From Podarcis cretensis (Eukaryota), in assembly GCA_951804945.1 (NCBI GenBank), contig OX638153.1, positions 48,856,001 through 48,920,000 on the forward strand: a stretch of 64,000 nt of DNA. The letters run 5' to 3'. Both the position numbers and the translations under genes were made by a program. This document shows positions 5,877-49,083 of this stretch, piece by piece. How positions within the stretch are numbered: the first letter of the stretch is position 1; every line of letters starts with the position of its first letter. Under the pieces are notes generated by a model, which made no database searches, was not told the origin of the DNA, and was given only the letters and a program-made list of their open reading frames with translations.

Positions 5877-6108
5877 CCATAGCGGAGCAAGGTGGGTACG
5901 GTGGATGCGGTTTGCCCCAGGTTTGATCCCTGAGGGGGGTGACATTGCCACAGGTGGCGCCCCCCGGACTCTCCCCGTCACCGCCACACTCCCCTGGGAT
6001 GCGTGCCAATGCAGGCTCATCCCCATGGGTGGCTAGCCCCGCCCCTGCGGATGGCTAGCCAGGCCCCCGCAGCCTCTCTGGGTGCCGGAGCAGCTAGCTC
6101 CACCTCTG
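5877..6108. mobile_element. hAT-type MITE related to 49977-50338
   Basis: Degenerate TIR (gcggagc...gctccacctctg); 8-bp TSD AGTCAAAG/AGTCACAG; shared gcggtttgccccagg segment. Confidence 0.65.
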
Positions 6109-6524
6109 AGTCACAGAGTGTGTGAAGATCATTCTTAAAGTAAGCCAGTAGTTTCATTTTTTGTAAATAGCCTGAATTCAGCATAGATTGATCAAATCAC
6201 CCCCATCAGCTTTTAGTATCCATTTTTAGGTGAACAGGGTAGTTTGCAGCTCTACATTATTTGTTTAGGCTACTGGTGGGGAACCCATTGTTAGTTTCTG
6301 TTTGCCACTGTGCAGCTGCTTAGAGTCACAGGACTCTGTTTACATTCCACACATTCCATACTGTTGAAAGTCTCACGGAGACGGATGTGACGTTAGTGGT
6401 TTTCTGTTCCTTTGTTCCTTTGTTTGTTCCAGTTGCTCTCTGCTTTCATAGAGAGAGTCTGTATATTTCTTTGCTGTCTGCGTAGTAAGAAATAAAACTC
6501 TTTAGCGATGTAGCCATAAATCTC

Positions 6525-8367
6525 TCTTTTTTTTAAAGTAATTTTTATTGGGTTTTCACATTTTAAAAACACACACAGATGAAAACAAAAACAAAACATG
6601 TATAATTTCATAACCTTACTTTCTTAACCCCACTCCCTGACTTCCCCCCACCCCCCCTTCATACATCCCAAATCCAATAATTAGCTCAGCAGGTTCTTAT
6701 CTCTCTTCTTTAACATATTATTGTTATTTTTAAAATTAATTCTTATTACTTGGCCAAATTTTACTTGTCCAATTTTCTTATAAATATTAAGTCCTTTTCT
6801 AAGGTCGACCCAAATTCCCTTCCACGAATTTCCCCCTTTTTATATTGATGTAGGTCATAATAGCCAAACACAAAAGTCATAAAAGTTTTAAGATTCTGTT
6901 CTCCCCTCCCTCCCTACCCCGGTTTCTGTCCCTTCCCAAATAAATGTCCACAAAACAGTTCTTAGCCTGGATTCCTCACATCAGAGGCCTTCAAATCTCT
7001 GTCAGTCTCTCTCTGCCGGTTTTGTTGGTAGCCCTCTTTGTTGGTCCTCAGTTCTCGAAGGAGCTCTGGCACAGTCTCATCAAATTTTCTTCCATCCAAA
7101 ATACTTGGTAACAGCTGCTGCAACAAGCCAACTGATCTCCCATACTCAAAGAGGAAGCCCCAATCATATTTCTTGTTTCTTTTAAGTTCCAGTATTCCAA
7201 GTGTTCCATGGGCTTCCTCTTTCCACTTTCGCATCTTTCGCAGATTGGTAATTCCAAGATCTTCTTCTTTATGTTCTAGCAGTGTAGGCTTCAGATTGGT
7301 ACTCTCCTGTAGTTTCTTAACTCCTTCTTCCCTCTCCTCCAGTTCCAAAAAAGTCTCCTCTGGTTCAGCTGCAGATTTTGTTTCAGTCAGATCCTTTATG
7401 CATTCAGCAGGGTTGCTTGTTTTAGAGTTCAAGGTTATAAGTTGTTTGTTCATAGCCATGCTTTGCTCTTGCAGTATTCCCACGAGAAGAAACATTCTTT
7501 CTATCTCTGCCTGTAATTTTCCATCTGTAGCCATTGTAATGTTTCAAAGTTTCCCCTAGGGGGATTCTAGTTACTTAATAGTCCTTTCCCAACAATCTGT
7601 TGTTTTGTTATTTGTAACTACTTTGTTCCCAAGCACTTTAATTCAAATATAGCAAATTTAGTCCAGAGAGATGTTAAATAATAAAATTTTTTAACTTTAA
7701 CTGCCCGTTTGACAGCTCCTTTGACAGCTGTCAAACTCCTTGTTCCTTTTCCTCCAGCTCACACACAGGGGCACTCCCGGGTCGGGGGGGGGGGGGTTAG
7801 ACAAAAGCCTCTAAAGTTCAACTCTTACTCTCCAGCACAAATCTTCTTCTGTCAAATTCGTGGAATTAATGTCTTTTAACTCGTACCAAAAAAAAAAAAA
7901 AAAAAAGATCTCTCCACCTTAGTTCTCCGATCCTTGCTTTAAATCTTTTGTAAATAGAGGGGGTGCGGACTTCCCTTTAGCACATTTCCCGATTGTACCG
8001 AATTTAAAGGTAAAAATTTTAAAGTCCAAATTCCATTCTACTCACGGGTTATTTCAAGTCCAAATTTCAGGGAAAAAAGTCAGCGCTCTCCGGCCATGGC
8101 TCGCGGCTTCGCTCCACTGCAGTAGCGGTCTACTCACAGCACCACGCCACTCTCCGTACCCTCTCCGTAGCCTTTAAAAAGGCTCTTCGTGGGTCGGGGG
8201 GGTGCTTGAGGTGCCCACCGAGTCACCAAGTCTGCAGGCTTCCGCGCCTGCGGTTTCTAAGGGTCCCCGCGTCGCCGTCGCGATGAGACCCGTCTGCAGC
8301 AGAGCCGATTCCCTCCGGAGCTCGGAGGGAATCCGCCATTAGCCGATCGCGCTAACCCGGAAGTCCT
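6525..8367 (-). mobile_element. Full-length non-autonomous L1-type retroposon (HAL1-like), copy A, ~1.84 kb
   Basis: 18-bp TSD GATGTAGCCATAAATCTC at 6507-6524 and 8368-8385. CpG-rich 5' end AGGACTTCCGG...AATGGCGG; single ORF; G-rich 3' tract; AATAAA plus A tail; no ORF2. Confidence 0.85.
6962..7534 (-). CDS. 190-aa ORF of retroposon copy A, probably a shortened L1 ORF1p derivative
   Basis: Intact from ATG to TAA and homologous end to end with 43143-43787. Heptad-like N-terminus. NLK...EEDL and GFLFEYG recall the ORF1p RRM start and CTD (inference). Confidence 0.6.
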   Translation of the reverse strand: MATDGKLQAEIERMFLLVGILQEQSMAMNKQLITLNSKTSNPAECIKDLTETKSAAEPEETFLELEEREEGVKKLQESTNLKPTLLEHKEEDLGITNLRKMRKWKEEAHGTLGILELKRNKKYDWGFLFEYGRSVGLLQQLLPSILDGRKFDETVPELLRELRTNKEGYQQNRQRETDRDLKASDVRNPG

Positions 8368-8539
8368 GATGTAGCCATAAATCTCATCACTTCCATGTGC
8401 TGCTTTGATTATCTGCTGGATGGGAATGTGCCTGAGGCCTTATCAGAGGCTCAGGTCGTTAATTATTGTCGGAGGCGATTCCGAAGGCTTGGCCGGAGGA
8501 AAATGAGCTTTATCAGCTTGGCCGAGCAGAGATCCCGAC

Positions 8540-8660
8540 ACCCATGACCCTCCAGATGATGTTGGACTACAACTCCCATCATGCCTAAACATTGGCCATG
8601 ATGGCTGGGTTTCATAGGAGTTAGAGTTCAACGTCTGGAGCGCCACAGATTTCCTTCTAC
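8540..8660. repeat. Short palindromic MITE-like repeat; other copies near 20350-20490, 26945-27075, 33700-33795 and 34905-34980
   Basis: gatgttggactacaactcccatc...ggagtt.agttcaac with internal inverted symmetry. Confidence 0.6.
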
Positions 8661-8829
8661 TGGTTTAGGCCTACGGATTTTGGTAACCATGCAACTTTAT
8701 ATTTCTATTTAATTTAATTTACTGTCATCAACAAAATGTGGCCCGTTTTGTCAGCAGTTTTGACTAATGTACAATTTTTCCTAATAAAATACCATGTTTG
8801 TATGGTATTTTGCACTAATACATGGGAAA

Positions 8830-8979
8830 TTGTGGGCTCTATTTTTCTTGAGGTTTTTAAGCAGAGGTTGGACTGCCATTTGTCATGGATGCTTTAGCTG
8901 AGATCCCTGCATTGCTGGGGGTTGGACTAGATGACCCTTGGGTCTCTTCCATCTCTATGGTTCTATAATTCTATGATTC
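8830..8979 (+). mobile_element. CR1 LINE 3' end
   Basis: gggttggactagatgaccctt...ttcc followed by (ATTCTRTG)-like tail. Confidence 0.8.
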
Positions 8980-9024
8980 ATTTTTGTAAATATTGCCCTC
9001 AAAATTTGCATTTTTGTCACGAAA

Positions 9025-17846: not shown

Positions 17847-18591
17847 CCAGGTCCCAGCTCACAGAGGACCAACGCTAGGCTGTAGTTATGTACAAAAGTC
17901 TTTATTGAGATTCAGTCTCCATTTTAAAGCCGCAGCGTGCAGCTCTACGTCCCGACCTTAGACCGGCGAAGTCCCGTCTGAGTCTCCTCCCCCACCACAC
18001 CAGTTTAAGACTCTCGCTTTGCTCCACCTCTTCCTAAGTTCCTTTCTCCTCTGGGCCCTCCTGCCCGCTAGGGTCTCATCCTTCCTGGACTCCTCTGACG
18101 CTGACCCTGACGATTCTTGCCCCTCCTTCCGGCGGGCTTTAGGACCTGGTTCCCTATCCGGGCTACCTTCTGTGCCGCTCTCCTGTACCTTTGAACTTGG
18201 CGCGCGCGCCCAGCCTGCAACTTTCCTCTTAACCGTTAACTCGCTCTCCGATGGAGGCGTGGTCAACCCTGACTCATCTTCTCTCGCTGGTGGTGCATAT
18301 GTGGGCTCTGACACCTGGGACTCCTCCCCCCCACTACGCTCTGGTGGGGAAGCTGTTCCTGATTTCCAACTGCTGCTCTGGGAGTCCCCGCTGGCCCCTT
18401 GCTTCTGGGGTGTCCCCCTTGGGTCGCCCCTTGCCCTGCCCATCGGCGCCCCCTTCTGTGAATCTTCCGATTCGCTGGAGAGGCTCATGGAATCTATCGG
18501 GCTGCTGTCATATTCTCCTACGCTGCCCTCGGATTGCTCCCCCTCGCTTTCCATCTCCTCTCCTCCCTGCGCTCCCGCTGAGTCCCTGACA
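17847..18591 (-). mobile_element. Second LTR of the same family, 3' end lost in the assembly gap
   Basis: Starts TGTCAGGG at 18591; collinear with 25718-26545; contains the 198-aa ORF 17958-18554 and AATAAA. Confidence 0.85.
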
Positions 18592-32456: not shown

Positions 32457-33560
32457 ATGGGTACAGAGAACTCACTAATATCTATGGTTTATCATCCTGC
32501 AGGCCAAATGTCTGAGCTCTTTGAAGGTTCGGGTACCATTCCAACCAACTTCACTCCCGTGGCTTACAACATTGCTATGAATGGGACCTTGATGGTTTTC
32601 CATGGTTTGCAGCTAGTGCAACGGTTGAAGCTGTTGATCATTCTGATGTACACAGGTGTGGTCATTATTGGGATGGTAGGCAACTGCCTTCTGGTTCATG
32701 TCATACTGCGTGTGAAGAAGATGCACAATGTCACCAACTTCCTCATTGGGAACTTGGCCCTTTCGGATGTGGCCATGTGCACAACCTGTGTCCCCCTGAC
32801 TCTCGCCTACATTTTCGAGCCACGCGGCTGGATATTTGGCAGTGCAATGTGCTACTTTGTCTACTTCATGCAGCCGGTCACAGTCTATATCTCCATCTTC
32901 ACCTTGGCCACCATCGCCGTCGACCGGTACATAGTCATCATGCACCCCCTGCGACGCCGGATCTCTCTGCAGCTCAGTGCGTACATGGTCCTCTTCATCT
33001 GGATTCTCTCTTGCTGCTTGGCGTTACCAGCCATGGCCCACACCTATTATGTGGAGCTGCATCAACAGGGTGTCATCCTGTGCGAGGAATTCTGGGGGGA
33101 GCAAGAGCGCCAGCGACAAGCCTATGCGTTGTGCCTGCTGCTGATCACTTACCTCTTCCCCTTGCTAGCCATTCTGATCTCTTACTTCAAGATCTTTCTC
33201 AAGCTGAAGAACAGGGTTGTGCCAGGGTGTGTTACTCAGACTCAGGCAGACTGGGACAGAGCCAGGCGGAAGAGGACATTCTGCCTGCTGGTCATGGTAG
33301 TAGTGGTGTTTGGGGTGTGCTGGCTTCCTCTCCACACTTTCAATCTCATCCGGGACATTAACATAAATGCAATTGATCCTTATTATTTCAGCCTGGTCCA
33401 GCTGGTTTGCCATTGGTTTGCCATGAGTTCAGCATGCTACAACCCCTTCATATATGCCTGGCTCCATGATAGCTTTAGAGAAGAGCTTAAGAAATTAGTG
33501 GTCTGGCATAGAAAAGTAGCTCCTTCTGGGCAAAGTGTAACTGTAAGTGTTGTGATCTGA
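32457..33560 (+). CDS. PRLHR: Prolactin-releasing peptide receptor (GPR10), mammalian-type PRLHR; 367 aa class A GPCR with one coding exon
   Basis: Seven hydrophobic segments; GN in TM1, NLALSD in TM2, DRY, CEEFW, CWLP, NPFIY. PRLHR signatures [47 protein letters not shown] and the C-terminal PDZ ligand VSVVI match human PRLHR as I recall it. N-glycosylation sequons NFT and NGT. Confidence 0.95.
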
Positions 33561-36500: not shown

Positions 36501-36826
36501 AGAAAGTGGCCTGTCTTCCTGTTACAAAATGAAATATTGATTTTTAAATCCTGATGAATAGCACACATCTCTGTTCCATGGTGTTAAAAGCAAAGAAAAC
36601 CTTCAAATCACACTGGATATCACAGCAGGTGGTTGGGAAGATGTGATGCCTCTCTGCATTTTTGTGAATATCAGCCTTCCAGCCTTTTCCTTCAGGCAGG
36701 CTGACATGCAAAGCCATGAGCAAATACAGGGGAAATTGAAGGCACAAGGTCTTTGGCATACTGTAAAGGTCAGTATAAGAGGCTCACAAAAGGGAGGCAG
36801 GAGTTGACTATAATAGCCCATAGTTC

Positions 36827-37245
36827 CTCTCCTGCGTGTGAGTGTCTGAGGGCCCTGCTCCTTCCTGCCACTCACCATCTGGCCTGGGGTGGGGCCTGAA
36901 GCCTCATAAGGACTGCTGCGCTCTGCTGCCCAGGAGGACTCTCCTGTATGTGAGTGTCTGAGGGCCCTGCTCCTTCCTGCCACTCACCATCTGGCCTGGG
37001 GTGGGGCCTGAAGCCTCACAGGGACTGCTGCGCTCTGCTGCCCAGGAGGACTCTCCTGCGTGTGAGTGTCTGAGGGCCCTGCTCCTTCCTGCCACTCACC
37101 ATCTGGCCTGGGGCGGGGCCTGAAGCCTCATAAGGACTGCTGCACTCCGCTGCCCAGGAGGACTCTCCTGTGTGAGTGTCTGGGGGCCCTGCTCCTTCCT
37201 GCCACTTACCACCTGGCCCAGGGCAGGGCCTGACGGGCCTCACTA
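36827..37245 (+). repeat. 112-bp tandem repeat, ~3.7 units, at the LINE 5' end
   Basis: Units start with ctctcctg at 36827, 36939, 37051 and 37163. Confidence 0.9.
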
Positions 37246-40151
37246 GGACAGTTGCTGTTACTGCTGGAGGGGTGCAGAGTGCTTTTAAAATGTTTTAAAA
37301 ATTTTATTTTGAATTTTTTGTATGTGGGGGTGGGGTGGATGTTTATTGGGCCTGGGAATTTGTTTGATTTTATGTTTTTGTAATTTTTATTGTTTTTTGT
37401 TTGTATTGTTTTATTTGTGTTGTTGTTGTTGTTGTTGTTGTTTTTTAAAGGTGTTATTTTGTTCTTAAGGGGAGGGGTCAGGGCTGCTGGGGAGTTGGTC
37501 CCAGCCAACAAAATGGCTGGGACATGTTTCACAGGGGGGAATGCACTGGGACAACCGATCTCAGTGATCACAGGTAGGAGGAGGAGTTACGCTAAGACCA
37601 GACCATGTCATTACAGAGGAGGCAGGTTTAGTCGTTGTCTGAGGACTATCCCTGCCTCCGGGTCTGGTCCTGACCGGATGGATACTAGAATCAGCAAGGG
37701 ATACCCACATGACCTGAAAGTGTTGCTGTGCAATGCCAGGTCAATGATTCATAAGACCACTGCCATCCATGACTTGATCATGGATGGAGGACTTGACCTG
37801 GCCTGGATGAAGCAGATGGGCCTGTCCTTGCCGCTGCTTGTCCACCAGGTTTCTCTTACGCACAGCAACCCAGGTCATGTGGGCGGGGAGGGGGGGTTGC
37901 AGTGATTTTTAGGAAGTCATTAGTTTGCACCAGGCGTCCTATTGGGAAGACCCAATTTTCCGAGTGCATGTTCTGGAAGTTGGGCAATAGGGGCAGTACA
38001 GGATTCCTTTTGGTGTACCGACCTCCCCGCTGCACCAAGGATTCCCTGCCCGAGCTGCTTCAGGTTGTGGCGGATGTTCTCCTGGAGACACCTAGCTTGG
38101 TTGTCCTAGGGGATTTTAACATCCATGCCGACATGACCTTACAAGGGGCCGCTCGGGACTTTGTGGAAAGCATGGCCTCCATGGGGCTGTCCCTGAATAA
38201 GTCTGGCCCAACCCATAGCCGCGGACATGCCTTGGACCTGGTGTTTACCTCTATGGATGTTGGTGATCTGACACTAAGTAAAAGTGAAACGAAAGAAGTG
38301 CCATGGTCAGATCACTTCCTGGTGCAACTGGACTTCTCTGCGACCCTTCCCCTCTGCAGGTAGGTGGGACCAATTCAGATGGTCCGCCCCCGCCACTTAA
38401 TGGATCCAAATGGTTTCCAGAGAGTGGTAGGGGATGCTTTATCCCATGTTGATGGCCTTTCAGCCGATTCCCTGGTGGCCCACTGGAATGTGGAGTTAAC
38501 CAGGGCTATTGACTGTTTGGCTCGAAGTGCCCTCTCCGATTGCATGGAGCCCGGAGAGCCCCGTGGTTTTCCACGGATCTGAGGGCAATGAAACAATCGT
38601 TGAGACGGCTAGAGCGCCGGTGGCGGATAACTCATTCCGAATCTGACCGGACACAGGTTAGAGCTCAACGTCAAGCCTACCAAGTGGCGATAGCGACGGC
38701 GAAGAAGACTTTCTTCACTGCCTCTATTGCATCTGCAGAAAACAGCAGCAGGAGACTCTTTCAGGTGGTTCACAATTTAGCGGAACCACCTGTAACATCG
38801 GCGCCCAGTACGGGCCATATGTTCTCCTGCAATGATTTTGCAATTTTTTTTGCAGATAAAATCGCTCAGATTCGGGAAGAAGTAGACTCCACCATGGGAG
38901 CAGGGCCGGGGCGGGAGAGTGCTAGAGTCCTGTCTGGTCAAGTTGTGTGGGATCAATTCCAATCTGTTACCTCCGAGGATGTGCACAGGCTGCTTGGACG
39001 AGTGAAGCCAACCACCTGTCTCCTGGATCCTTGCCCATCCTGGCTTATAAAAGCTAGCCGGGAAGGACTGGGCGATGGGCTTCGTGGGGTGGTGAATGCT
39101 TCCCTTCGTGAGGGAGCCTTCCCAGACCCGCTGAAAGAGGCGGTTATTAAACCGCTTCTTAAAAAACCATCTTTAGATGCGGCCACGATGGCCAATTATC
39201 GCCCAGTCTCAAACCTTCCATTCTTGGGCAAGGTGATTGAGCGAGTGGTTGCTGAACAACTCCAGGCACACCTGGAAGAAGCGGACCATTTGGATCCCTT
39301 CCAGTCGGGATTCAGGCCTCATCATGGGACTGAAACTGCCTTGGTCGCACTGGTTGATGATCTCCGGCGGGCTAGGGACAAAGGTGAGAGCTGTTTCCTA
39401 GTTCTGCTGAATGGGGTAACTGTGCCCCTGAAGGACCAGGTGTGCAGCTTGGGAGTCATTTTGGACTCACAGGTGTCCATGGAGGCACAGGTCAAATCTG
39501 TATCCAGGGCAGCTGTTTACCAGTTCCATCTGGTACGTAGGCTGAGACCCTATCTGCCTGCAGACTGTCTCGCCAGAGTGGTACATGCTCTGGTTATCTC
39601 CCGCTTGGACTACTGCAATGCGCTCTACGTGGGGCTACCTTTGAAGGTGACCCGGAAACTACAACTAATCCAGAATGCGGCAGCTAGACTGGTGACTGGG
39701 AGCGGCCGCCGAGACCATATAACACCGGTCTTGAAAGACCTACATTGGCTCCCAGTACGTTTCCGAGCACAATTCAAAGTGTTGGTGCTGACCTTTAAAG
39801 CCCTAAATGGCCTCGGTCCAGTATATCTGAAGGAGCGTCTCCTCCCCCATCGTTCTGCTCGGACACTGAGGTCCAGCTCCGAGGGCCTTCTGGCGGTTCC
39901 CTCACTGCGAGAGGTCAGGTTACAGGGAACCAGGCAGAGGGCCTTCTCAGTAGTGGCGCCCACCCTGTGGAATGCCCTCCCATCAGATGTCAAAGCGATA
40001 AACAACTACCTGACATTCAGAAGACATCTGAAGGCAGCCCTGTTCAGGGAAGTTTTTAATATGTGACATTTTAGTGTATTTTTCATCCTTGTTGGAAGCC
40101 GCCCAGAGTGGCTGAGGAAACCCAGCCAGATGGGCGGGGTACAAATAATAA

Positions 40152-40193
<42 letters not shown>
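36827..40193 (+). mobile_element. Near full-length L2/CR1-group LINE, defective
   Basis: 5' tandem repeats; ORF from ~37513 with APE motifs (LLCNARS, VYRPP, LGDFN, GHALDLVF, SDH) and RT-flanking motifs (NYRPVSNLPFLGK, QSGFR, HGTETAL, SRLDYCN, LHWLPV). Frameshifts, stop at 38361, RT core deleted near 39409; 3' stem-loop plus (TTA)n tail. Confidence 0.9.
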
Positions 40194-40195
<2 letters not shown>

Positions 40196-40212
40196 AGGTT
40201 AGCAGAAAGCAA

Positions 40213-40619
40213 GCACCTACATTGGCTCCCAGTACGTTTCCGAGCACAATTCAAAGTGTTGGTGTTGACCTTTAAAGCCCTAAATGGCCTTGGCCCACTA
40301 TACCAGAAGGAGTGTCTCCACCCCCATCGTTCTGCCCGGACGCTGAGGTCCAGCGCCGAGGGCCTTCTGGCGGTTCCCTCATTGCGAGAAGCAAAGCTAC
40401 AGGGAACCAGGCAGAGGGCCTTCTCAGTAGTGGCGCCCGCCCTGTGGAACGCCCTCCCATCAGATGTCAAAGAGATAAACCTGACATTCAGAAGACATCT
40501 GAAGGCAGCCCTGTTCAAGGAAGTTTCTAATGTGTGACATCTTAGTGTATTTTTGGTCTTTGTTGGAAGCCACCCAGAGTGGCTGGAGAAACCCAGCCAG
40601 ATGGGCGGGGTACAAATAA

Positions 40620-40655
<36 letters not shown>
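40213..40655 (+). mobile_element. 5'-truncated second copy of the same L2-type LINE
   Basis: Repeats LHWLPVRFRAQFK...FKEV, the 3' stem-loop and the (TTA)n tail. Confidence 0.9.
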
Positions 40656-42500: not shown

Positions 42501-42563
42501 AGTGGTTGCACTAGCACGTCCTTTAACAATGTCAGGACCACTTTCTCTCTAAAAGGACTTCTG

Positions 42564-44612
42564 TTTTTTTTTTAATGAATATTTATTAGCATTTTTAAAA
42601 ACAAAACAACAACAAAAATAGACAAAAATACAAAAATCCAAAACTTACAAACAATTAAAAATACCCAAACACATAAAGTTTCAATTACTTATTTTCATTT
42701 AACTTGTTTCTCAGACCTCCTCACACCTCCCCTTCTTGTATTCCAGTTTAAATTATTAGCTCAGCAAGTCCTTATTGCTTATTTCTCAGCTTTAACTTAA
42801 TAATTTATTTTAGCATGTTGTTATTTCACTTTTCCTCCTTTCTTCCATATTCTCAATTTATTTTTGCAAGCCTTATTTTCATTTAATTTAAACCATTTTA
42901 AAAACCAATTTCAGGTTATCCAAACTTAAACATCAATATTTATACATCATCACTCATTCTAAACATTTTTCTAAAGTCGACCAAAATTTCCCTTCCACGG
43001 CTTTCCCCATTTTCATACAAATAGCGAAACAAAAATAAAAACAGAACATATTATAATTATATACCCTTTGGATTCCCAAACTCCACCCTCCCCCTTCCCG
43101 GTTTCAGTCCCCAACAAGTGTCCATCAGTCCCAATATACTGTTTAGCCTGGAGATCTCACATCCGAGGCTCTTAATTCTCTCTCAGTTCCTCTCTGCCGG
43201 TCTTTTTGATAGTCCTTAATGTTGAACCCCAAATCTCGGAGAGGCTCTGGCCCAACAGGATCCATGTTTCTTCCAGCCAGTCCTCCATATTTAAAAGTAA
43301 GGCCTATGGGGTACTCCAAATCTTGTTTCATACTCCTTTCAAGTCCAAATGTCCCCAAAGCTCCAACTTCCTTGACCAAATTTCTAATCCTTCGATCTTC
43401 AGATCTCCACATAAGAAGATCTCTCAATTTTCCACTCTCCAATTCAGGCCAGACTTTCCACATCAGGTTTTTGTTTTGCTTTGTTTCCATCATGTCAGGC
43501 CTCAAGTTACAGTTTTCCTTTAACATCTGCGAAATTACAGCTCCTCCTTCCTTTTGTTCAGGGGCAACATATGTCTCCTTCTCCATAATCTCAAAGCTCT
43601 CAAGTTTCTCTGTTGGTCCAATTGAATAGGCTTCCTGTTTCAAATCCTTATCAGTTTCAACAAGGTTGTTTACTGTTAAGTCCAGAGTTGTAACATTTAT
43701 AGCCAAAACATTGATTTGGCCTTGTAACTTTCCCAAGAGAATGAAGGCTCTGTCCAATTCAACCTGGATTTTCCCTCCTCCAGCCATTCTTGTAGTGTCC
43801 CTAAACCCCCTCTAGAGGGATTTTAGTTCCTTACTATTCCTTTCAGCTCAAATCCAAAAATCAAGTTAGTTTGTATCAGCCCTTCCTTATTTTCAACAAA
43901 TTGTAACAAATATAACCAGCAGAAGCAACAAAAACAAGTTCTCTTTTTCCGTCTTGACAGCTAACTTGACAGCTGTCAAACTCTTCAGAACTTCATCAAC
44001 AGGCTCTCTCGTGGGACGCTCCCAGATCCGGGGGGGGGGGGGGGGTGAAAGTTCAGCTCCCAAATTTTTTTTATCCTCCAGTAAAATTCCTTATAATGTC
44101 AAACCGTGAAATTAAAATCTTTTTACAAAAAGAAAAGAAGAGGTTTTCTCGACCTTAGTTAGCAGGTCCTTTGCTTTAAATTATTTACAAAGGGGGGGGG
44201 GGCGACTTCCTTTTTAAACCTTCCCCGCTCGTTCCTAATTCATCAAAAATTTTCTTTAAAGTTCCAATTTCCGTACTACTCACGGGTTGTTGCTTTTAAG
44301 TCCAATTGTTCAAAGGAAAAAGTCAGCGCTCTACGACAATGGCTTGCGGCTTCACTCCACAGAAGAAGCGGTCTACTCTCAGCACCATGCCGCACCCCGT
44401 CCCCGTTCCGGAGCCTTTAAAAAGGCTCCTTCGCAGATTGGGGGGGGGCACAAATGGTGCCCGCCGAGTCACCAAGCTCACAGGCTTCCGCGCCTGTGAT
44501 TTTTAAGGGTCCCCGCGTCGTCGCCGCGGCTGGACCCGATCCTGCAGAGCCGATTCCCTCCAGAGCTCGGAGGGAATCCGCCATTAGCCGATGACGCTAA
44601 CCTGGAAGTCCT
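42564..44612 (-). mobile_element. Full-length non-autonomous L1-type retroposon (HAL1-like), copy B, ~2.05 kb
   Basis: 16-bp TSD TCTAAAAGGACTTCTG at 42548-42563 and 44651-44666. 5' ~330 nt clearly homologous to copy A; AATAAA plus A tail at the left end. Confidence 0.85.
43143..43787 (-). CDS. 214-aa ORF of retroposon copy B, probably a shortened L1 ORF1p derivative
   Basis: MAGGGKIQVELDRAFILLGKLQGQ aligns with MATDGKLQAEIERMFLLVGILQEQ; YQKDRQRGTERELRASDVRSPG* aligns with YQQNRQRETDRDLKASDVRNPG*. Confidence 0.6.
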   Translation of the reverse strand: MAGGGKIQVELDRAFILLGKLQGQINVLAINVTTLDLTVNNLVETDKDLKQEAYSIGPTEKLESFEIMEKETYVAPEQKEGGAVISQMLKENCNLRPDMMETKQNKNLMWKVWPELESGKLRDLLMWRSEDRRIRNLVKEVGALGTFGLERSMKQDLEYPIGLTFKYGGLAGRNMDPVGPEPLRDLGFNIKDYQKDRQRGTERELRASDVRSPG

Positions 44613-44650
44613 CTGGTTTCTCTTCAGATCGTATAAATCTTTCACCTTTT
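44611..44650 (+). pseudogene. RNU5: U5 snRNA 5' fragment (about nt 4-43), retro-captured antisense to the adjacent retroposon
   Basis: CTCTGGTTTCTCTTCAGATCGTATAAATCTTTCACCTTTT matches the vertebrate U5 5' end (ATACTCTGGTTTCTCTTCAGATCGYATAAATCTTTCGCCTTTTACTAAAG) and stops in loop I. It lies inside the element's TSD. Confidence 0.9.
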
Positions 44651-46099
44651 TCTAAAAGGACTTCTGGACCTATTCATTTTCTCCCTACTAGAGGCTATAA
44701 GTCGTGAAAGGCAAAGATCCAGTGAACATGTGGTTCCATGAACCTGATAAAGCACCTTGCCCACATATGTGGGCCTCATAAACAAAGATAATTCAGTAAT
44801 ATACAACCAGCCAATGCTCTGGGCAGCTTCATGGACTGGCCTACCATAATTGGCTACAAGCAATTTTACCCTCAAAATGCCTCACAGCAAAAACCTCTCC
44901 TAGCAGGCCACCACTGGACCTACTGCATCATGTTTAAAAGGCCATAAGCCACTCTGAAAAAACTCCATAATTCATACAAGTATTCAGCTGGATTCTTCAT
45001 AAGTCTTCCTCCACTTGTGTCCTGCACATGGACAGGCAAAGTTTGTGATGTTTGCTTGTTTAGTTTTCAGTTTGCTCAATTCACTGTAAATGTCAGCCTG
45101 GAAAAATACATAGAGGTAAGGGAGGATGTGGGTGTTGCAGATATTAATATTGCTCAGTTTGAAGCGACTGGAAAAATAAGAACGGACTTCTTTTGAAATA
45201 AATGTACTATCCATAAAAATGTTATCCAAACTTTTACTGGAGCAGCGCCATCTTAAACATATCTGATGCTGTGGTGCAAAGATCCCTCCAGCGCCCCACC
45301 CCCCGTTTCCCAGAGTTGGCGATCTTTTCCCAAGCCTCTGCAGGAATCGCTCTCCTCCCGCGGGGGCTTGGGAAGGTTGCTGAACATCCGCCAGTCATAT
45401 GGTTGACAGGGTGCAGCTTGCAGGAGTGCAGGAGGGAAAGGGGAGGCCGCCGGCAAAACCACGCAGCTCCCCAACTCGCTGGGGCGCCCCTGAGAGGATG
45501 GCACCCTGGTGCAACGCGCCAGTAAACCCAATGGGAAAGATGGCTCTGACTGGCAGAACTCTTTAAAATAAAGCAGAATATATCAAATGTTAGAGCCAAA
45601 ATATCCATACAGTGTCTTGTGCTGCCCAGCACAGGCTCAGCATTTTAGAAAATATGAAATAATCCAGGCAGACGTATAAGCAAAGGTTTCTCTATCTCCA
45701 CAGCCTGCATTCCAGCCTCCAGACTTTACTTTCATTTCAGGAGAGCTTTGTTTACAACCTCACTCCATTAACTTTGGTAGACAAAGACTAAAAGGCAACT
45801 TCCTTTGTGATCTGAGCTGCTTATTATTGTGTCCATGGGCATGGGATCATAAGGTGAACTCTGAACTACAATAAATCAAATTACTGGTTCTTGTTTTTTT
45901 CTATTTTGTAAAGCAAATAATGGCATGGCCATCTAAGTACTTTGGTGAGCAGATGACGAGCATAGAGTTTGGAGGGAATATCCAGCAGGCTAATGGGGGG
46001 GGGGGTAGTTTTGGGGGAGGGTTTTATTTCCTTTTTTGTAGATTGGCACAATGATGTTCAATTTCCAACCAGCTGTCATTTGAGCTGTATTATTTATGT

Positions 46100-47930: not shown

Positions 47931-48051
47931 ATGAGCATATATTCCCTATGGGGGCAACTCTATTATTCATTCAAGCCGACCCAAAGTGAATGAGTGTGAG
48001 TGCGTGTATGTTTGTGCTCTAGTCAACCCAAAACTGCAAAGGAAAAAGACA

Positions 48052-49083
48052 ATGAATCTGGAGAATCTGACTTCCCAGAGCTTTCTTTCAGCAACCCACA
48101 GCAACACCAGCAATCTCTTCCTGGGGCTCCAGCTGGTTCAGTTCTTCAAGCCGCTTATCATCCCTTGCTACTCCCTTGTGGTTTTTGTGGGCATCATTGG
48201 GAATTACCTCCTCATCTACGTTATCTGCAAGACCAAAAAGATGCACAATGTCACCAACTTCCTGGTAGGCAACCTGGCCTTTTCGGACATGCTCATGTGT
48301 GCCACCTGCGTCCCCCTGACCCTGGCGTATGCCTTTGAGCCTCGAGGCTGGGTCTATGGGCACTTCATGTGCTACTTTGTGTTCCTGATGCAGCCGGTCA
48401 CGGTGTTTGTGTCTGTCTTCACCCTGACTGTCATTGCTGTGGACAGATACTACACCATGGTGTATCCCCTCCGCAGGAGGCTCACGATACCAATCTGCAC
48501 CTATATCCTGGCTGGCATTTGGCTGCTGAGCTGCATGCTGGCTGCCCCAGCCCTGCTGCGCACGTACTATGCCGAGTTTCCAGAGCTGGACTTCTCCATC
48601 TGCGAAGAATTTTGGTTTGACAGGAAGAGAGATCGCTTAGCTTATGCCTACAACACCCTCATTTTCACCTACGTCCTGCCCTTGGCAGTCATCTCTGTCT
48701 CCTACCTGAGGATATCTGTCAAGCTGAAAAACAGAGTTGTCCCTGGCAACGTCACCCAGAACCAAGCGGAGTGCGACCGAGCCCGGAGGAGGAAGACCTT
48801 TCGCCTGCTGGTCCTGGTGGTGGTTGCTTTCGGGGTTTGCTGGCTGCCTTTGCACATCTTTAATGTGATCAAGGACATCGATATCAAGCTGATAGACAAG
48901 AAGTATTTCAATCTCATCCAGCTGCTTTGCCACTGGTTTGCTATGATGTCTGCCTGCACAAATGCATTCCTTTATGCCTGGCTGCACGACAGCTTCAGGG
49001 GGGAGCTGAAGAAAATGTTCGCCTGGCCGAGGAAAAAAATAGGACCAGCCACCAATTGCATTGTGGCAAGCGTGGTGCTGTAA
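48052..49083 (+). CDS. PRLHR2: Prolactin-releasing peptide receptor-like paralogue (PRLHR2 type); 343 aa class A GPCR
   Basis: Same family motifs ([32 protein letters not shown]-terminal SVVL). [18 protein letters not shown] and [13 protein letters not shown] resemble the non-mammalian prlhr2 type; the symbol is tentative. The first in-frame ATG is 48052; the ORF track start at 47986 is a GTG. Confidence 0.9.

What the first reader, a model, noticed from the sequence alone, without database searches (positions are those of the whole stretch)
6525..8367. Complete protein-coding non-autonomous retroposon family (two diverged full-length copies)
Seen: two elements (6525-8367 and 42564-44612) each have a long TSD (18 and 16 bp), the same 5' terminus (AGGACTTCC), a CpG-rich leader with ETS-like (ACTTCC) and YY1-like (AATGGCGG) motifs, one intact short ORF, a G-rich tract, AATAAA and an A tail. 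Neither has an endonuclease or RT. The two copies share the same architecture despite heavy divergence, so these are not random L1 deletions but two subfamilies of a lineage that transposes as a ~2 kb unit. Known: HAL1 elements encode only ORF1 and borrow L1 ORF2. Inference: this is a squamate HAL1-like parasite with a much shorter ORF plus extra RNA and splicing signals. I cannot tell whether it is already in Repbase or Dfam.
Basis: partly seen in the sequence, partly recalled or inferred. Interest (0 to 1): 0.8.

Follow-up and report, generated by a model that had tools for sequence, protein, structure and literature searches.

The report
Lizard RT-less coding retroposon, two lineages
These are two complete copies of an abundant lizard jumping element that has an L1-style promoter head and poly(A) tail but no copying enzyme, so it must borrow one, and that carries a gene for a small fast-evolving protein with no recognisable relatives, including L1 ORF1p.

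Summary
Window 6527-8367 and 42564-44612 (both minus strand) are homologous over their whole length. Each is flanked by a perfect target-site duplication of 18 or 16 bp. Each has the same layout: a leader of about 830 nt starting AGGACTTCC, one ORF of 190 or 214 aa, a G-rich 3'UTR, AATAAA and a short A tail. Neither encodes an endonuclease or reverse transcriptase.

The leader is CpG-rich and starts like the published 5' terminus of Anolis L1 clade 1. The ORF belongs to a closed family of about 20 proteins of 129-215 aa, nearly all full-length. The family splits into two well-supported clades, and each window copy sits in a different one.

A profile search of 1.84 billion proteins, Pfam and PDB found no relative outside the family, and no match to L1 ORF1p. 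Reads from a public run suggest roughly a thousand or more copies.

Best reading: a non-autonomous retroposon mobilised in trans by an L1-type enzyme. It works like mammalian HAL1, but its protein has no RRM or CTD, so HAL1 membership is not shown.

The "RNA and splicing signals" are unsupported. Dfam and Repbase could not be queried. The scan has already noted this family many times on other DNA of this genome.

The parts
6507..6524 (.). Copy A, target-site duplication, 3'-side copy (18 bp)
   Evidence: Identical 18/18 to 8368-8385
6527..6961 (-). Copy A 3'UTR (435 nt). Contains an A8 tail at 6527-6534, AATAAA at 6544-6549, and G-quadruplex-type G tracts on the sense strand at 6903-6920 and near 6628-6657.
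   Evidence: Homologous to the copy B 3'UTR at 65-67% identity.
6962..7534 (-). Copy A ORF, 190 aa. Start context ACAATGG.
   Evidence: 38-63% identical to the other family proteins. Lies in clade 1 of the family tree.
7535..8367 (-). Copy A leader (833 nt). Starts AGGACTTCCGGG, with ATGGCGG 17 nt further on. CpG island over the first ~400 nt. Poly-C and poly-T tracts. Palindrome TTGACAGCTGTCAA at 7721-7734. Conserved GTGAGT.
   Evidence: The terminus motif matches the lizard L1 clade-1 consensus in PMC5381506. 4 upstream ATGs against 8.4 expected.
8306..8332 (-). Conserved 11-bp stem with 5-nt loop hairpin/palindrome in the copy A leader (sense nt 36-62). The counterpart in copy B is at 44551-44577.
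   Evidence: Copy B keeps the stem, with one G-C changed to G-U.
8368..8385 (.). Copy A, target-site duplication, 5'-side copy (18 bp)
42548..42563 (.). Copy B, target-site duplication, 3'-side copy (16 bp)
   Evidence: Identical 16/16 to 44651-44666
42564..43142 (-). Copy B 3'UTR (579 nt). A10 tail at 42564-42573 and AATAAA at 42582-42587.
43143..43787 (-). Copy B ORF, 214 aa. Start context AGAATGG.
   Evidence: 33% identical to the copy A ORF, with shared N and C termini. Lies in clade 2 of the family tree.
43788..44612 (-). Copy B leader (825 nt). Same terminus, hairpin, poly-C tract and palindrome (43966-43979) as copy A.
44613..44650 (+). 38 nt of foreign sequence between the copy B 5' end and its TSD. 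It resembles the 5' stem-loop of U5 snRNA and is inverted relative to the element.
Evidence: The U5 resemblance rests on my own recollection of vertebrate U5. Rfam gave no U5 match at E<=1.
44651..44666 (.). Copy B, target-site duplication, 5'-side copy (16 bp)

Best explanation
Both intervals are full-length insertions of one abundant, non-autonomous, polyadenylated retroposon family of a lizard genome.

The unit has three parts. First, an L1-type internal promoter and leader of about 830 nt: a CpG island that starts AGGACTTCC, with an ATGGCGG box 17 nt after GACTTCCGG. Second, one ORF of 190-215 aa. Third, a 3'UTR of 430-580 nt with G-rich tracts, AATAAA and an A tail.

Inferred cycle:
1. 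RNA polymerase II starts at the conserved terminus and the transcript is polyadenylated.
2. The ORF is translated from a good Kozak ATG that follows a leader poor in upstream ATGs.
3. The small protein coats its own RNA. It has an N-terminal heptad helix for oligomerisation, a disordered acidic middle and a basic C-terminal helix.
4. An ORF2 protein from an autonomous L1, supplied in trans, uses the poly(A) end for target-primed reverse transcription. This leaves 16-18-bp duplications.

Shown here: the anatomy, the shared origin of the two copies, the absence of RT and EN, the abundance, and the persistence of the ORF. Inferred: the transcription start, translation, the role of the protein, and the identity of the helper enzyme.
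For: - Perfect TSDs, a shared 5' terminus, AATAAA 14-17 nt before the A tail, and no second ORF.
- The two copies are homologous end to end. This includes the ORF's C-terminus and the 3'UTR just after it, so the ORF2-less layout predates their split.
- The leader start is of the same kind as the published Anolis L1 clade-1 terminus, GACTTCCGGTG-N8-ATGGCG. That paper also describes a long CpG-rich 5'UTR that is more conserved than the ORFs (PMC5381506). The same pattern is seen here: leader 80%, ORF 59%.
- The ORF is open in about 20 diverged family proteins at 30-63% identity. Nearly all cover it end to end, with conserved N and C termini.
- All ORF length differences between A and B are in frame, and dN/dS is about 0.48.
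- Both ORFs are longer than any ORF in 1000 shuffles.
- AlphaFold gives a confident helix at residues 3-39, a disordered middle and a weaker helix at 157-187.
- In run X1 the summed contig depth on the element is 1.3e5-7e5, against 60-90 for single-copy contigs of the flanks. The 5' end is as deep as the 3' end.
- Leads only, not support: unchecked scan notes report many other complete copies of 1.6-2.2 kb in this genome.
Against: - No autonomous L1 lies in this window, so the helper and the L1 origin of the 3' end could not be compared directly.
- Both target sites (AT/GAGA and TC/CAGA on the sense strand) differ from the mammalian L1 TT/AAAA preference.
- The A tails are short, at 8 and 10 nt.
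- The leader motif matches the published consensus in content but not in spacing (17 nt against 10 nt).
- dN/dS of 0.48 is weak constraint, measured on a saturated and partly uncertain alignment.
- The protein database holds only open frames, so it cannot show what share of copies keep the ORF.
- No RNA evidence: all runs laid were contigs, and the one possible RNA run covers only leader-like sequence.
Confidence: 0.8

Rival explanations
1. True HAL1. The ORF is a cut-down L1 ORF1p that keeps the coiled-coil stalk of the lizard L1 protein and has lost the RRM and CTD through an internal deletion. The family would then be an ordinary half-L1 with a crippled ORF1.
For: - L1-type leader terminus.
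- An N-terminal heptad helix where ORF1p has its coiled coil.
- By eye, a weak resemblance between the family's (E/K)D(L)(W/R)I..NL block and the NLRIxGxPE start of the L1 RRM. This comparison rests on my recollection and was not tested.
- An earlier follow-up of the scan reached this reading (s1-842333).
Against: - No L1 ORF1p Pfam model is hit by any of 22 members, even at E<=10.
- The family profile hits no L1 ORF1p chain in PDB at E<=10.
- It hits no protein longer than 215 aa among 1.84 billion representatives.
- Three other follow-ups of the scan found no relatives for the protein; one of them names L1 ORF1p explicitly.
- Coiled coils evolve fast, so a negative result is weak here.
Confidence: 0.35
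2. The short ORF is the normal first ORF of an autonomous L1-like lineage. These two copies are then just ORF2-deleted offshoots of no special standing.
For: The protein database would list such an ORF1 as a separate protein of about 200 aa either way. The contigs behind the hits are only about 0.9-1.9 kb, so they cannot show what follows the ORF.
Against: - Both diverged window copies share the same junction between ORF end and 3'UTR.
- Depth just downstream of the stop codon is of the same order as over the ORF.
- The published survey found a coiled coil, RRM and CTD in the ORF1 of every vertebrate L1 it examined, lizard L1 included (PMC5381506).
- Many scan notes report complete 1.6-2.2-kb copies (unchecked).
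Confidence: 0.07
3. Independent internal deletions of two different L1 copies, or processed pseudogenes of a host gene family. Either way, not a transposing family.
For: HAL1 elements arose several times independently in mammals (PMC5753468). Processed pseudogenes also carry a poly(A) tail and TSDs.
Against: - The layout and junctions are identical in both copies.
- A conserved internal promoter-like terminus sits exactly at the 5' end of both.
- The family has two deep clades.
- Depth is roughly 1000-fold or more above single-copy sequence.
Confidence: 0.03

Closest known systems
HAL1 (half-L1) elements of mammals
   Same: A non-autonomous L1 derivative that keeps a promoter-bearing 5' end and one ORF, has lost ORF2, and is mobilised in trans, leaving a poly(A) tail and TSDs (PMC5753468).
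   Different: HAL1 encodes a recognisable ORF1p. Here the protein is 190-215 aa, has no RRM or CTD, and has no detectable similarity to ORF1p. The host is a lizard, not a mammal.
Anolis L1 clade 1 (autonomous L1 families L1_AC*)
   Same: The 5' terminus is of the type GACTTCCGG...ATGGCG. The 5'UTR is long, CpG-rich and more conserved across lineages than the coding sequence (PMC5381506).
   Different: No ORF2 and no ORF1 RRM or CTD. Spacing between the two terminal motifs is 17 nt rather than 10 nt. There is one CpG island rather than two.
HeT-A of Drosophila (from my own knowledge; not tested here)
   Same: A poly(A) non-LTR element that encodes only a Gag-like protein and depends on another element's reverse transcriptase.
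   Different: Telomere-specific, unrelated in sequence, and much longer.
Short internally deleted elements (SIDEs) of LINEs
   Same: A LINE-derived element that keeps the LINE ends and lacks the enzyme. Such elements are described as rare for non-LTR elements (PMC6740152, abstract).
   Different: SIDEs are usually non-coding. This family keeps an ORF under some constraint.

Membership tests
HAL1 (half-L1) | Lacks ORF2 (endonuclease and reverse transcriptase) | tested here: met
   Elements are 1.84 and 2.05 kb. The only long sense ORF is 190/214 aa. No EN or RT Pfam hit.
HAL1 (half-L1) | Encodes a protein homologous to L1 ORF1p | tested here: not met
   None of 22 members hits an L1 ORF1p Pfam model at E<=10. 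No L1 ORF1p chain in PDB at E<=10. No relatives outside the family among 1.84e9 proteins.
HAL1 (half-L1) | L1-derived ends | tested here: inconclusive
   The 5' terminus matches the published lizard L1 clade-1 motif in content but not in spacing. No L1 in the window was available for comparison with the 3' end.
HAL1 (half-L1) | L1-type insertion signature (poly(A) tail, variable-length TSD) | tested here: met
   A8 and A10 tails after AATAAA. Perfect TSDs of 18 and 16 bp.
L1 ORF1p (coiled coil + RRM + CTD) | N-terminal coiled coil | tested here: inconclusive
   Confident helix at residues 3-39. Hydrophobic residues at heptad a/d positions, read by eye. Oligomerisation was not tested.
L1 ORF1p (coiled coil + RRM + CTD) | RRM and C-terminal domain, conserved in the ORF1 of all vertebrate L1 examined (PMC5381506) | tested here: not met
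   No Pfam match. The middle of the protein is predicted disordered. The protein is too short to hold both domains.
2A ribosome-skipping peptide | C-terminal D(V/I)ExNPG followed by P | tested here: not met
   The family ends ...ASD(V/L)(R/I)(N/S/D)PG followed by a stop codon. That is one residue fewer than the motif, the N varies, and a stop replaces the P. Consensus taken from the abstract of 10.64898/2026.09.24.754024.
SINE | Pol III head derived from a small RNA (tRNA, 7SL or 5S); short and non-coding | tested here: not met
   No tRNA found. No Rfam family reaches its threshold. The element is about 2 kb and coding.
Processed pseudogene or retrogene | Low copy number, derived from a host gene's mRNA | tested here: not met
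   Summed depth is 1e5-7e5 against 60-90 for single-copy contigs. The family has two deep clades.

The most novel reading that the evidence does not exclude
The ORF is not a remnant of ORF1p. It is a new kind of retroelement protein, either arisen de novo or captured, that lets an RT-less element build its own RNP and hijack L1 ORF2p. One possible route is co-assembly with, or competition against, L1 ORF1p through its N-terminal helix. The invariant C-terminal ...ASDVRxPG-stop would then be a functional signal of unknown kind. This would make the family a protein-coding L1 parasite of a type not described in the mammalian HAL1 literature.
Probability: 0.25. Interest if true: 0.7.

Novelty: new variant of a known kind. 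Interest (0 to 1): 0.45.

Why it matters
Published work describes lizard genomes as holding many low-copy autonomous L1 families. A non-autonomous element that outnumbers them, copies their promoter head and keeps a small protein of its own would bear on an open question: does a LINE parasite gain from coding for an RNA-coating protein?

It would also give a natural minimal version of such a protein for study: a coiled coil plus a basic tail, with no RRM.

In practice, the family should be masked and named in squamate genome annotation. Otherwise its ORF will be called as an orphan gene many times over.

Tried and rejected
1. 2A-like reading of the conserved ...DVRNPG-stop end. Rejected: wrong spacing, variable N, and no following proline.
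2. Known RNA in the leader. Rfam at gathering thresholds and at E<=1 gave only noise. No tRNA was found.
3. U5 snRNA call for 44613-44650. Rfam did not report U5, so the resemblance rests on my memory only.
4. ESM Atlas. No usable neighbours.
5. AlphaFold. Mean pLDDT was 50, so no fold search was run.
6. More DNA copies from public collections. An exact leader pattern found nothing in metagenome contigs. The protein-pattern scan gave one locus, L001, which looks like a fungal contig with a 32-residue chance match. I discarded it.
The Logan contigs behind P0001-P0020 could not be read, and cluster look-up gave no accessions or names.
8. Other long ORFs in the window as relatives. The 198-aa ORF at 17958-18554 is unrelated (hhalign probability 0.2%).
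9. The only LINE in the window (37.4-40.6 kb) has an (ATT)n tail and is not an L1-type partner.
10. Literature. Term searches found no description of a lizard half-L1 in the held library. Bao & Jurka 2010 on HAL1 was not held.
11. Read laying returned contigs only. It therefore gives no transcript start, strand or expression, and no empty site was shown.

Full report
**Observation**

Both elements lie on the minus strand.

Copy A runs from 8367 (5' end, AGGACTTCC) to 6527. It is flanked by a perfect 18-bp duplication at 6507-6524 and 8368-8385. A GA separates its 8-nt A tail from the duplication.

Copy B runs from 44612 to 42564. It has a perfect 16-bp duplication at 42548-42563 and 44651-44666 and a 10-nt A tail. 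In B the upstream duplication does not touch the family terminus. 38 foreign nucleotides (44613-44650) lie between them.

The two copies align over their whole length. BLAST within the window finds only these two copies.

Each copy has this layout:
- a leader of 833 or 825 nt;
- one ORF of 190 or 214 aa;
- a 3'UTR of 435 or 579 nt.

AATAAA sits 14-17 nt before the tail. In copy A the sense strand also carries G-quadruplex-type G tracts.

CpG observed/expected is about 1.0-1.2 over the first 400 nt, against 0.27 in nearby DNA.

The terminus motif and a 14-nt palindrome in the leader each occur exactly twice in 64 kb, once per element. Chance expectation is 0.03-0.04.

An 11-bp hairpin or palindrome at leader positions 36-62 is kept in both copies, with one G-C changed to G-U.

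No endonuclease or reverse-transcriptase domain and no second long ORF are present.

**The ORF**

The two proteins are 33% identical but share their N and C termini.

Word-indexed searches found 11 further proteins of 176-215 aa. All came from Logan assemblies, all are unnamed, and all cover the query end to end.

A profile of 13 members was scored against every one of 1.84 billion representative proteins. It returned 11 proteins of 129-215 aa, all from this family, and nothing else at E<=0.001.

Negative results against known families:
- None of 22 members hits any L1 ORF1p Pfam model, even at E<=10.
- The profile hits no L1 ORF1p chain in PDB at E<=10.
- The ESM Atlas gave no usable neighbour.

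AlphaFold predicts a confident helix at residues 3-39, a disordered acidic middle and a weaker basic helix at 157-187. Read by eye from the alignment, hydrophobic residues sit at heptad a/d positions in the first helix.

Nearly all members end ...RASD(V/L)(R/I)(N/S/D)PG followed by a stop. This resembles a 2A peptide but fails its definition. The motif is one residue short, the N varies, and a stop replaces the proline (consensus).

A maximum-likelihood tree splits the family into two clades with 99/98 support. Copy A falls in one and copy B in the other.

**Is the ORF maintained?**

- Both ORFs exceed the longest ORF in all 1000 shuffles.
- All six length differences between the two proteins are in frame, whereas gaps in the UTRs have arbitrary lengths.
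- Nei-Gojobori dN/dS is about 0.48 overall.
- The leaders hold 4 upstream ATGs against about 8.5 expected (3-4% of shuffles have as few), and the start codons have A at -3 and G at +4.

The constraint is therefore real but weak. The ORF is also the fastest-evolving part of the element: 59% nucleotide identity, against 80% for the first 400 nt of the leader.

**Link to L1**

Boissinot and Sookdeo (2016, PMC5381506) report that Anolis L1 clade 1 has long, CpG-rich 5'UTRs. [quoted passage not shown]

The elements here begin A-GGACTTCCGG, and 17 nt after GACTTCCGG comes ATGGCGG. They show the same pattern of leader conservation. This supports an L1-derived head, although the spacing differs.

The same paper states that the ORF1 of every vertebrate L1 it examined has a coiled coil, an RRM and a CTD. 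This protein lacks the last two.

HAL1 is defined as a non-autonomous L1 derivative that encodes only ORF1p (PMC5753468). The family therefore works like HAL1, but membership is not shown.

**Abundance**

I laid contigs of four public runs on 5900-9000. In run X1 the summed depth on the element is 1.3e5-7e5. Single-copy contigs of the flanks have depths of 60-90.

This suggests roughly a thousand or more copy equivalents at 85% identity or better. The tool warns that this figure is not a copy number.

The 5' leader is as deep as, or deeper than, the 3' end. This fits mostly full-length copies, or a leader shared with L1.

Two other coded organisms hold stretches of the element with 0-3 differences. 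They also hold an identical flank, so they may be very close relatives of the source.

All runs were contigs, so nothing can be said about transcript starts or expression. The one possible RNA run covers only leader-like sequence.

**Mechanism**

I commit to the following reading, at about 0.8 for the family-level reading overall.
1. Pol II transcribes from the internal leader.
2. The transcript is polyadenylated.
3. The small protein is translated and probably oligomerises and binds its own RNA.
4. An L1 ORF2p supplied in trans carries out target-primed reverse transcription.

The foreign 38 nt at the 5' junction of copy B look like an inverted piece of U5 snRNA. If so, they fit priming or template switching on an snRNA during integration. 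The U5 identification rests on my recollection only, because Rfam did not report U5.

The two target sites do not match the mammalian TT/AAAA preference. That is a mild point against L1 as the helper, or may simply reflect a sample of two.

**Earlier scan notes**

The scan has met this family many times on other DNA of this genome. 23 notes matched 'HAL1' and 70 matched 'autonomous partner leader'; some of the latter are unrelated.

Four follow-ups bear on it. Three call the protein an orphan or novel coiled-coil protein. One calls it a crippled ORF1. I treated these as leads only.

**Limits**

- No tool here queries Dfam, Repbase or the rest of this genome.
- No L1 lies in the window.
- The stretch of N near 17.7-17.9 kb was left as it is.

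Noticed in passing
window 44613-44650: 38 nt sit between the 5' end of copy B and its TSD. They read, on the + strand, like the 5' stem-loop I region of U5 snRNA, so they are inverted relative to the element. The TSD's first bases also resemble the next bases of U5. This suggests second-strand priming or template switching on an snRNA. Rfam did not call U5.
   Followed up: partly
window 32457-33560 (+) and 47986-49083 (+): Two intact single-exon rhodopsin-family GPCR ORFs of 367 and 365 aa (7tm_1, E 1e-53 to 1e-57). They look like tandem paralogues. Copy B lies between them.
   Followed up: no
window 36800-40650: A plus-strand LINE with endonuclease and reverse-transcriptase fragments (37902-38363, 38540-40066) ending in an (ATT)n tail at about 40620-40655. 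Tandem repeats of about 120 bp precede it at 36800-37260. It looks like the BovB/RTE type, not an L1-type partner for the poly(A) family.
   Followed up: partly
window 17958-18554 (-): A GC-rich 198-aa ORF, rich in Ser, Gly and Glu, followed by AATAAA. It lies next to an N stretch and inside SINE-like sequence. It has no Pfam hit and is unrelated to the family studied here.
   Followed up: partly
window 8306-8332 and 44551-44577; 7721-7734 and 43966-43979: Two conserved palindromic elements in the leader: an 11-bp-stem hairpin near the 5' end, and TTGACAGCTGTCAA with a second AGCTGTCAA just downstream. They may be protein-binding sites or RNA structure. Function unknown.
   Followed up: partly
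window 6316-6523 and 8396-8499; 8500-8603 and 8812-9000: The DNA into which copy A inserted is itself repetitive (summed depth about 3e4). Just beyond it lie very high-copy SINE/CR1-tail-like repeats (depth 1e6 or more) in all four runs.
   Followed up: no
L001 (metagenome contig Ga0153999_1001246): The only metagenome hit to the family's C-terminal pattern. By its other ORFs it looks like a fungal contig, and the 32-residue match is most likely chance.
   Followed up: partly
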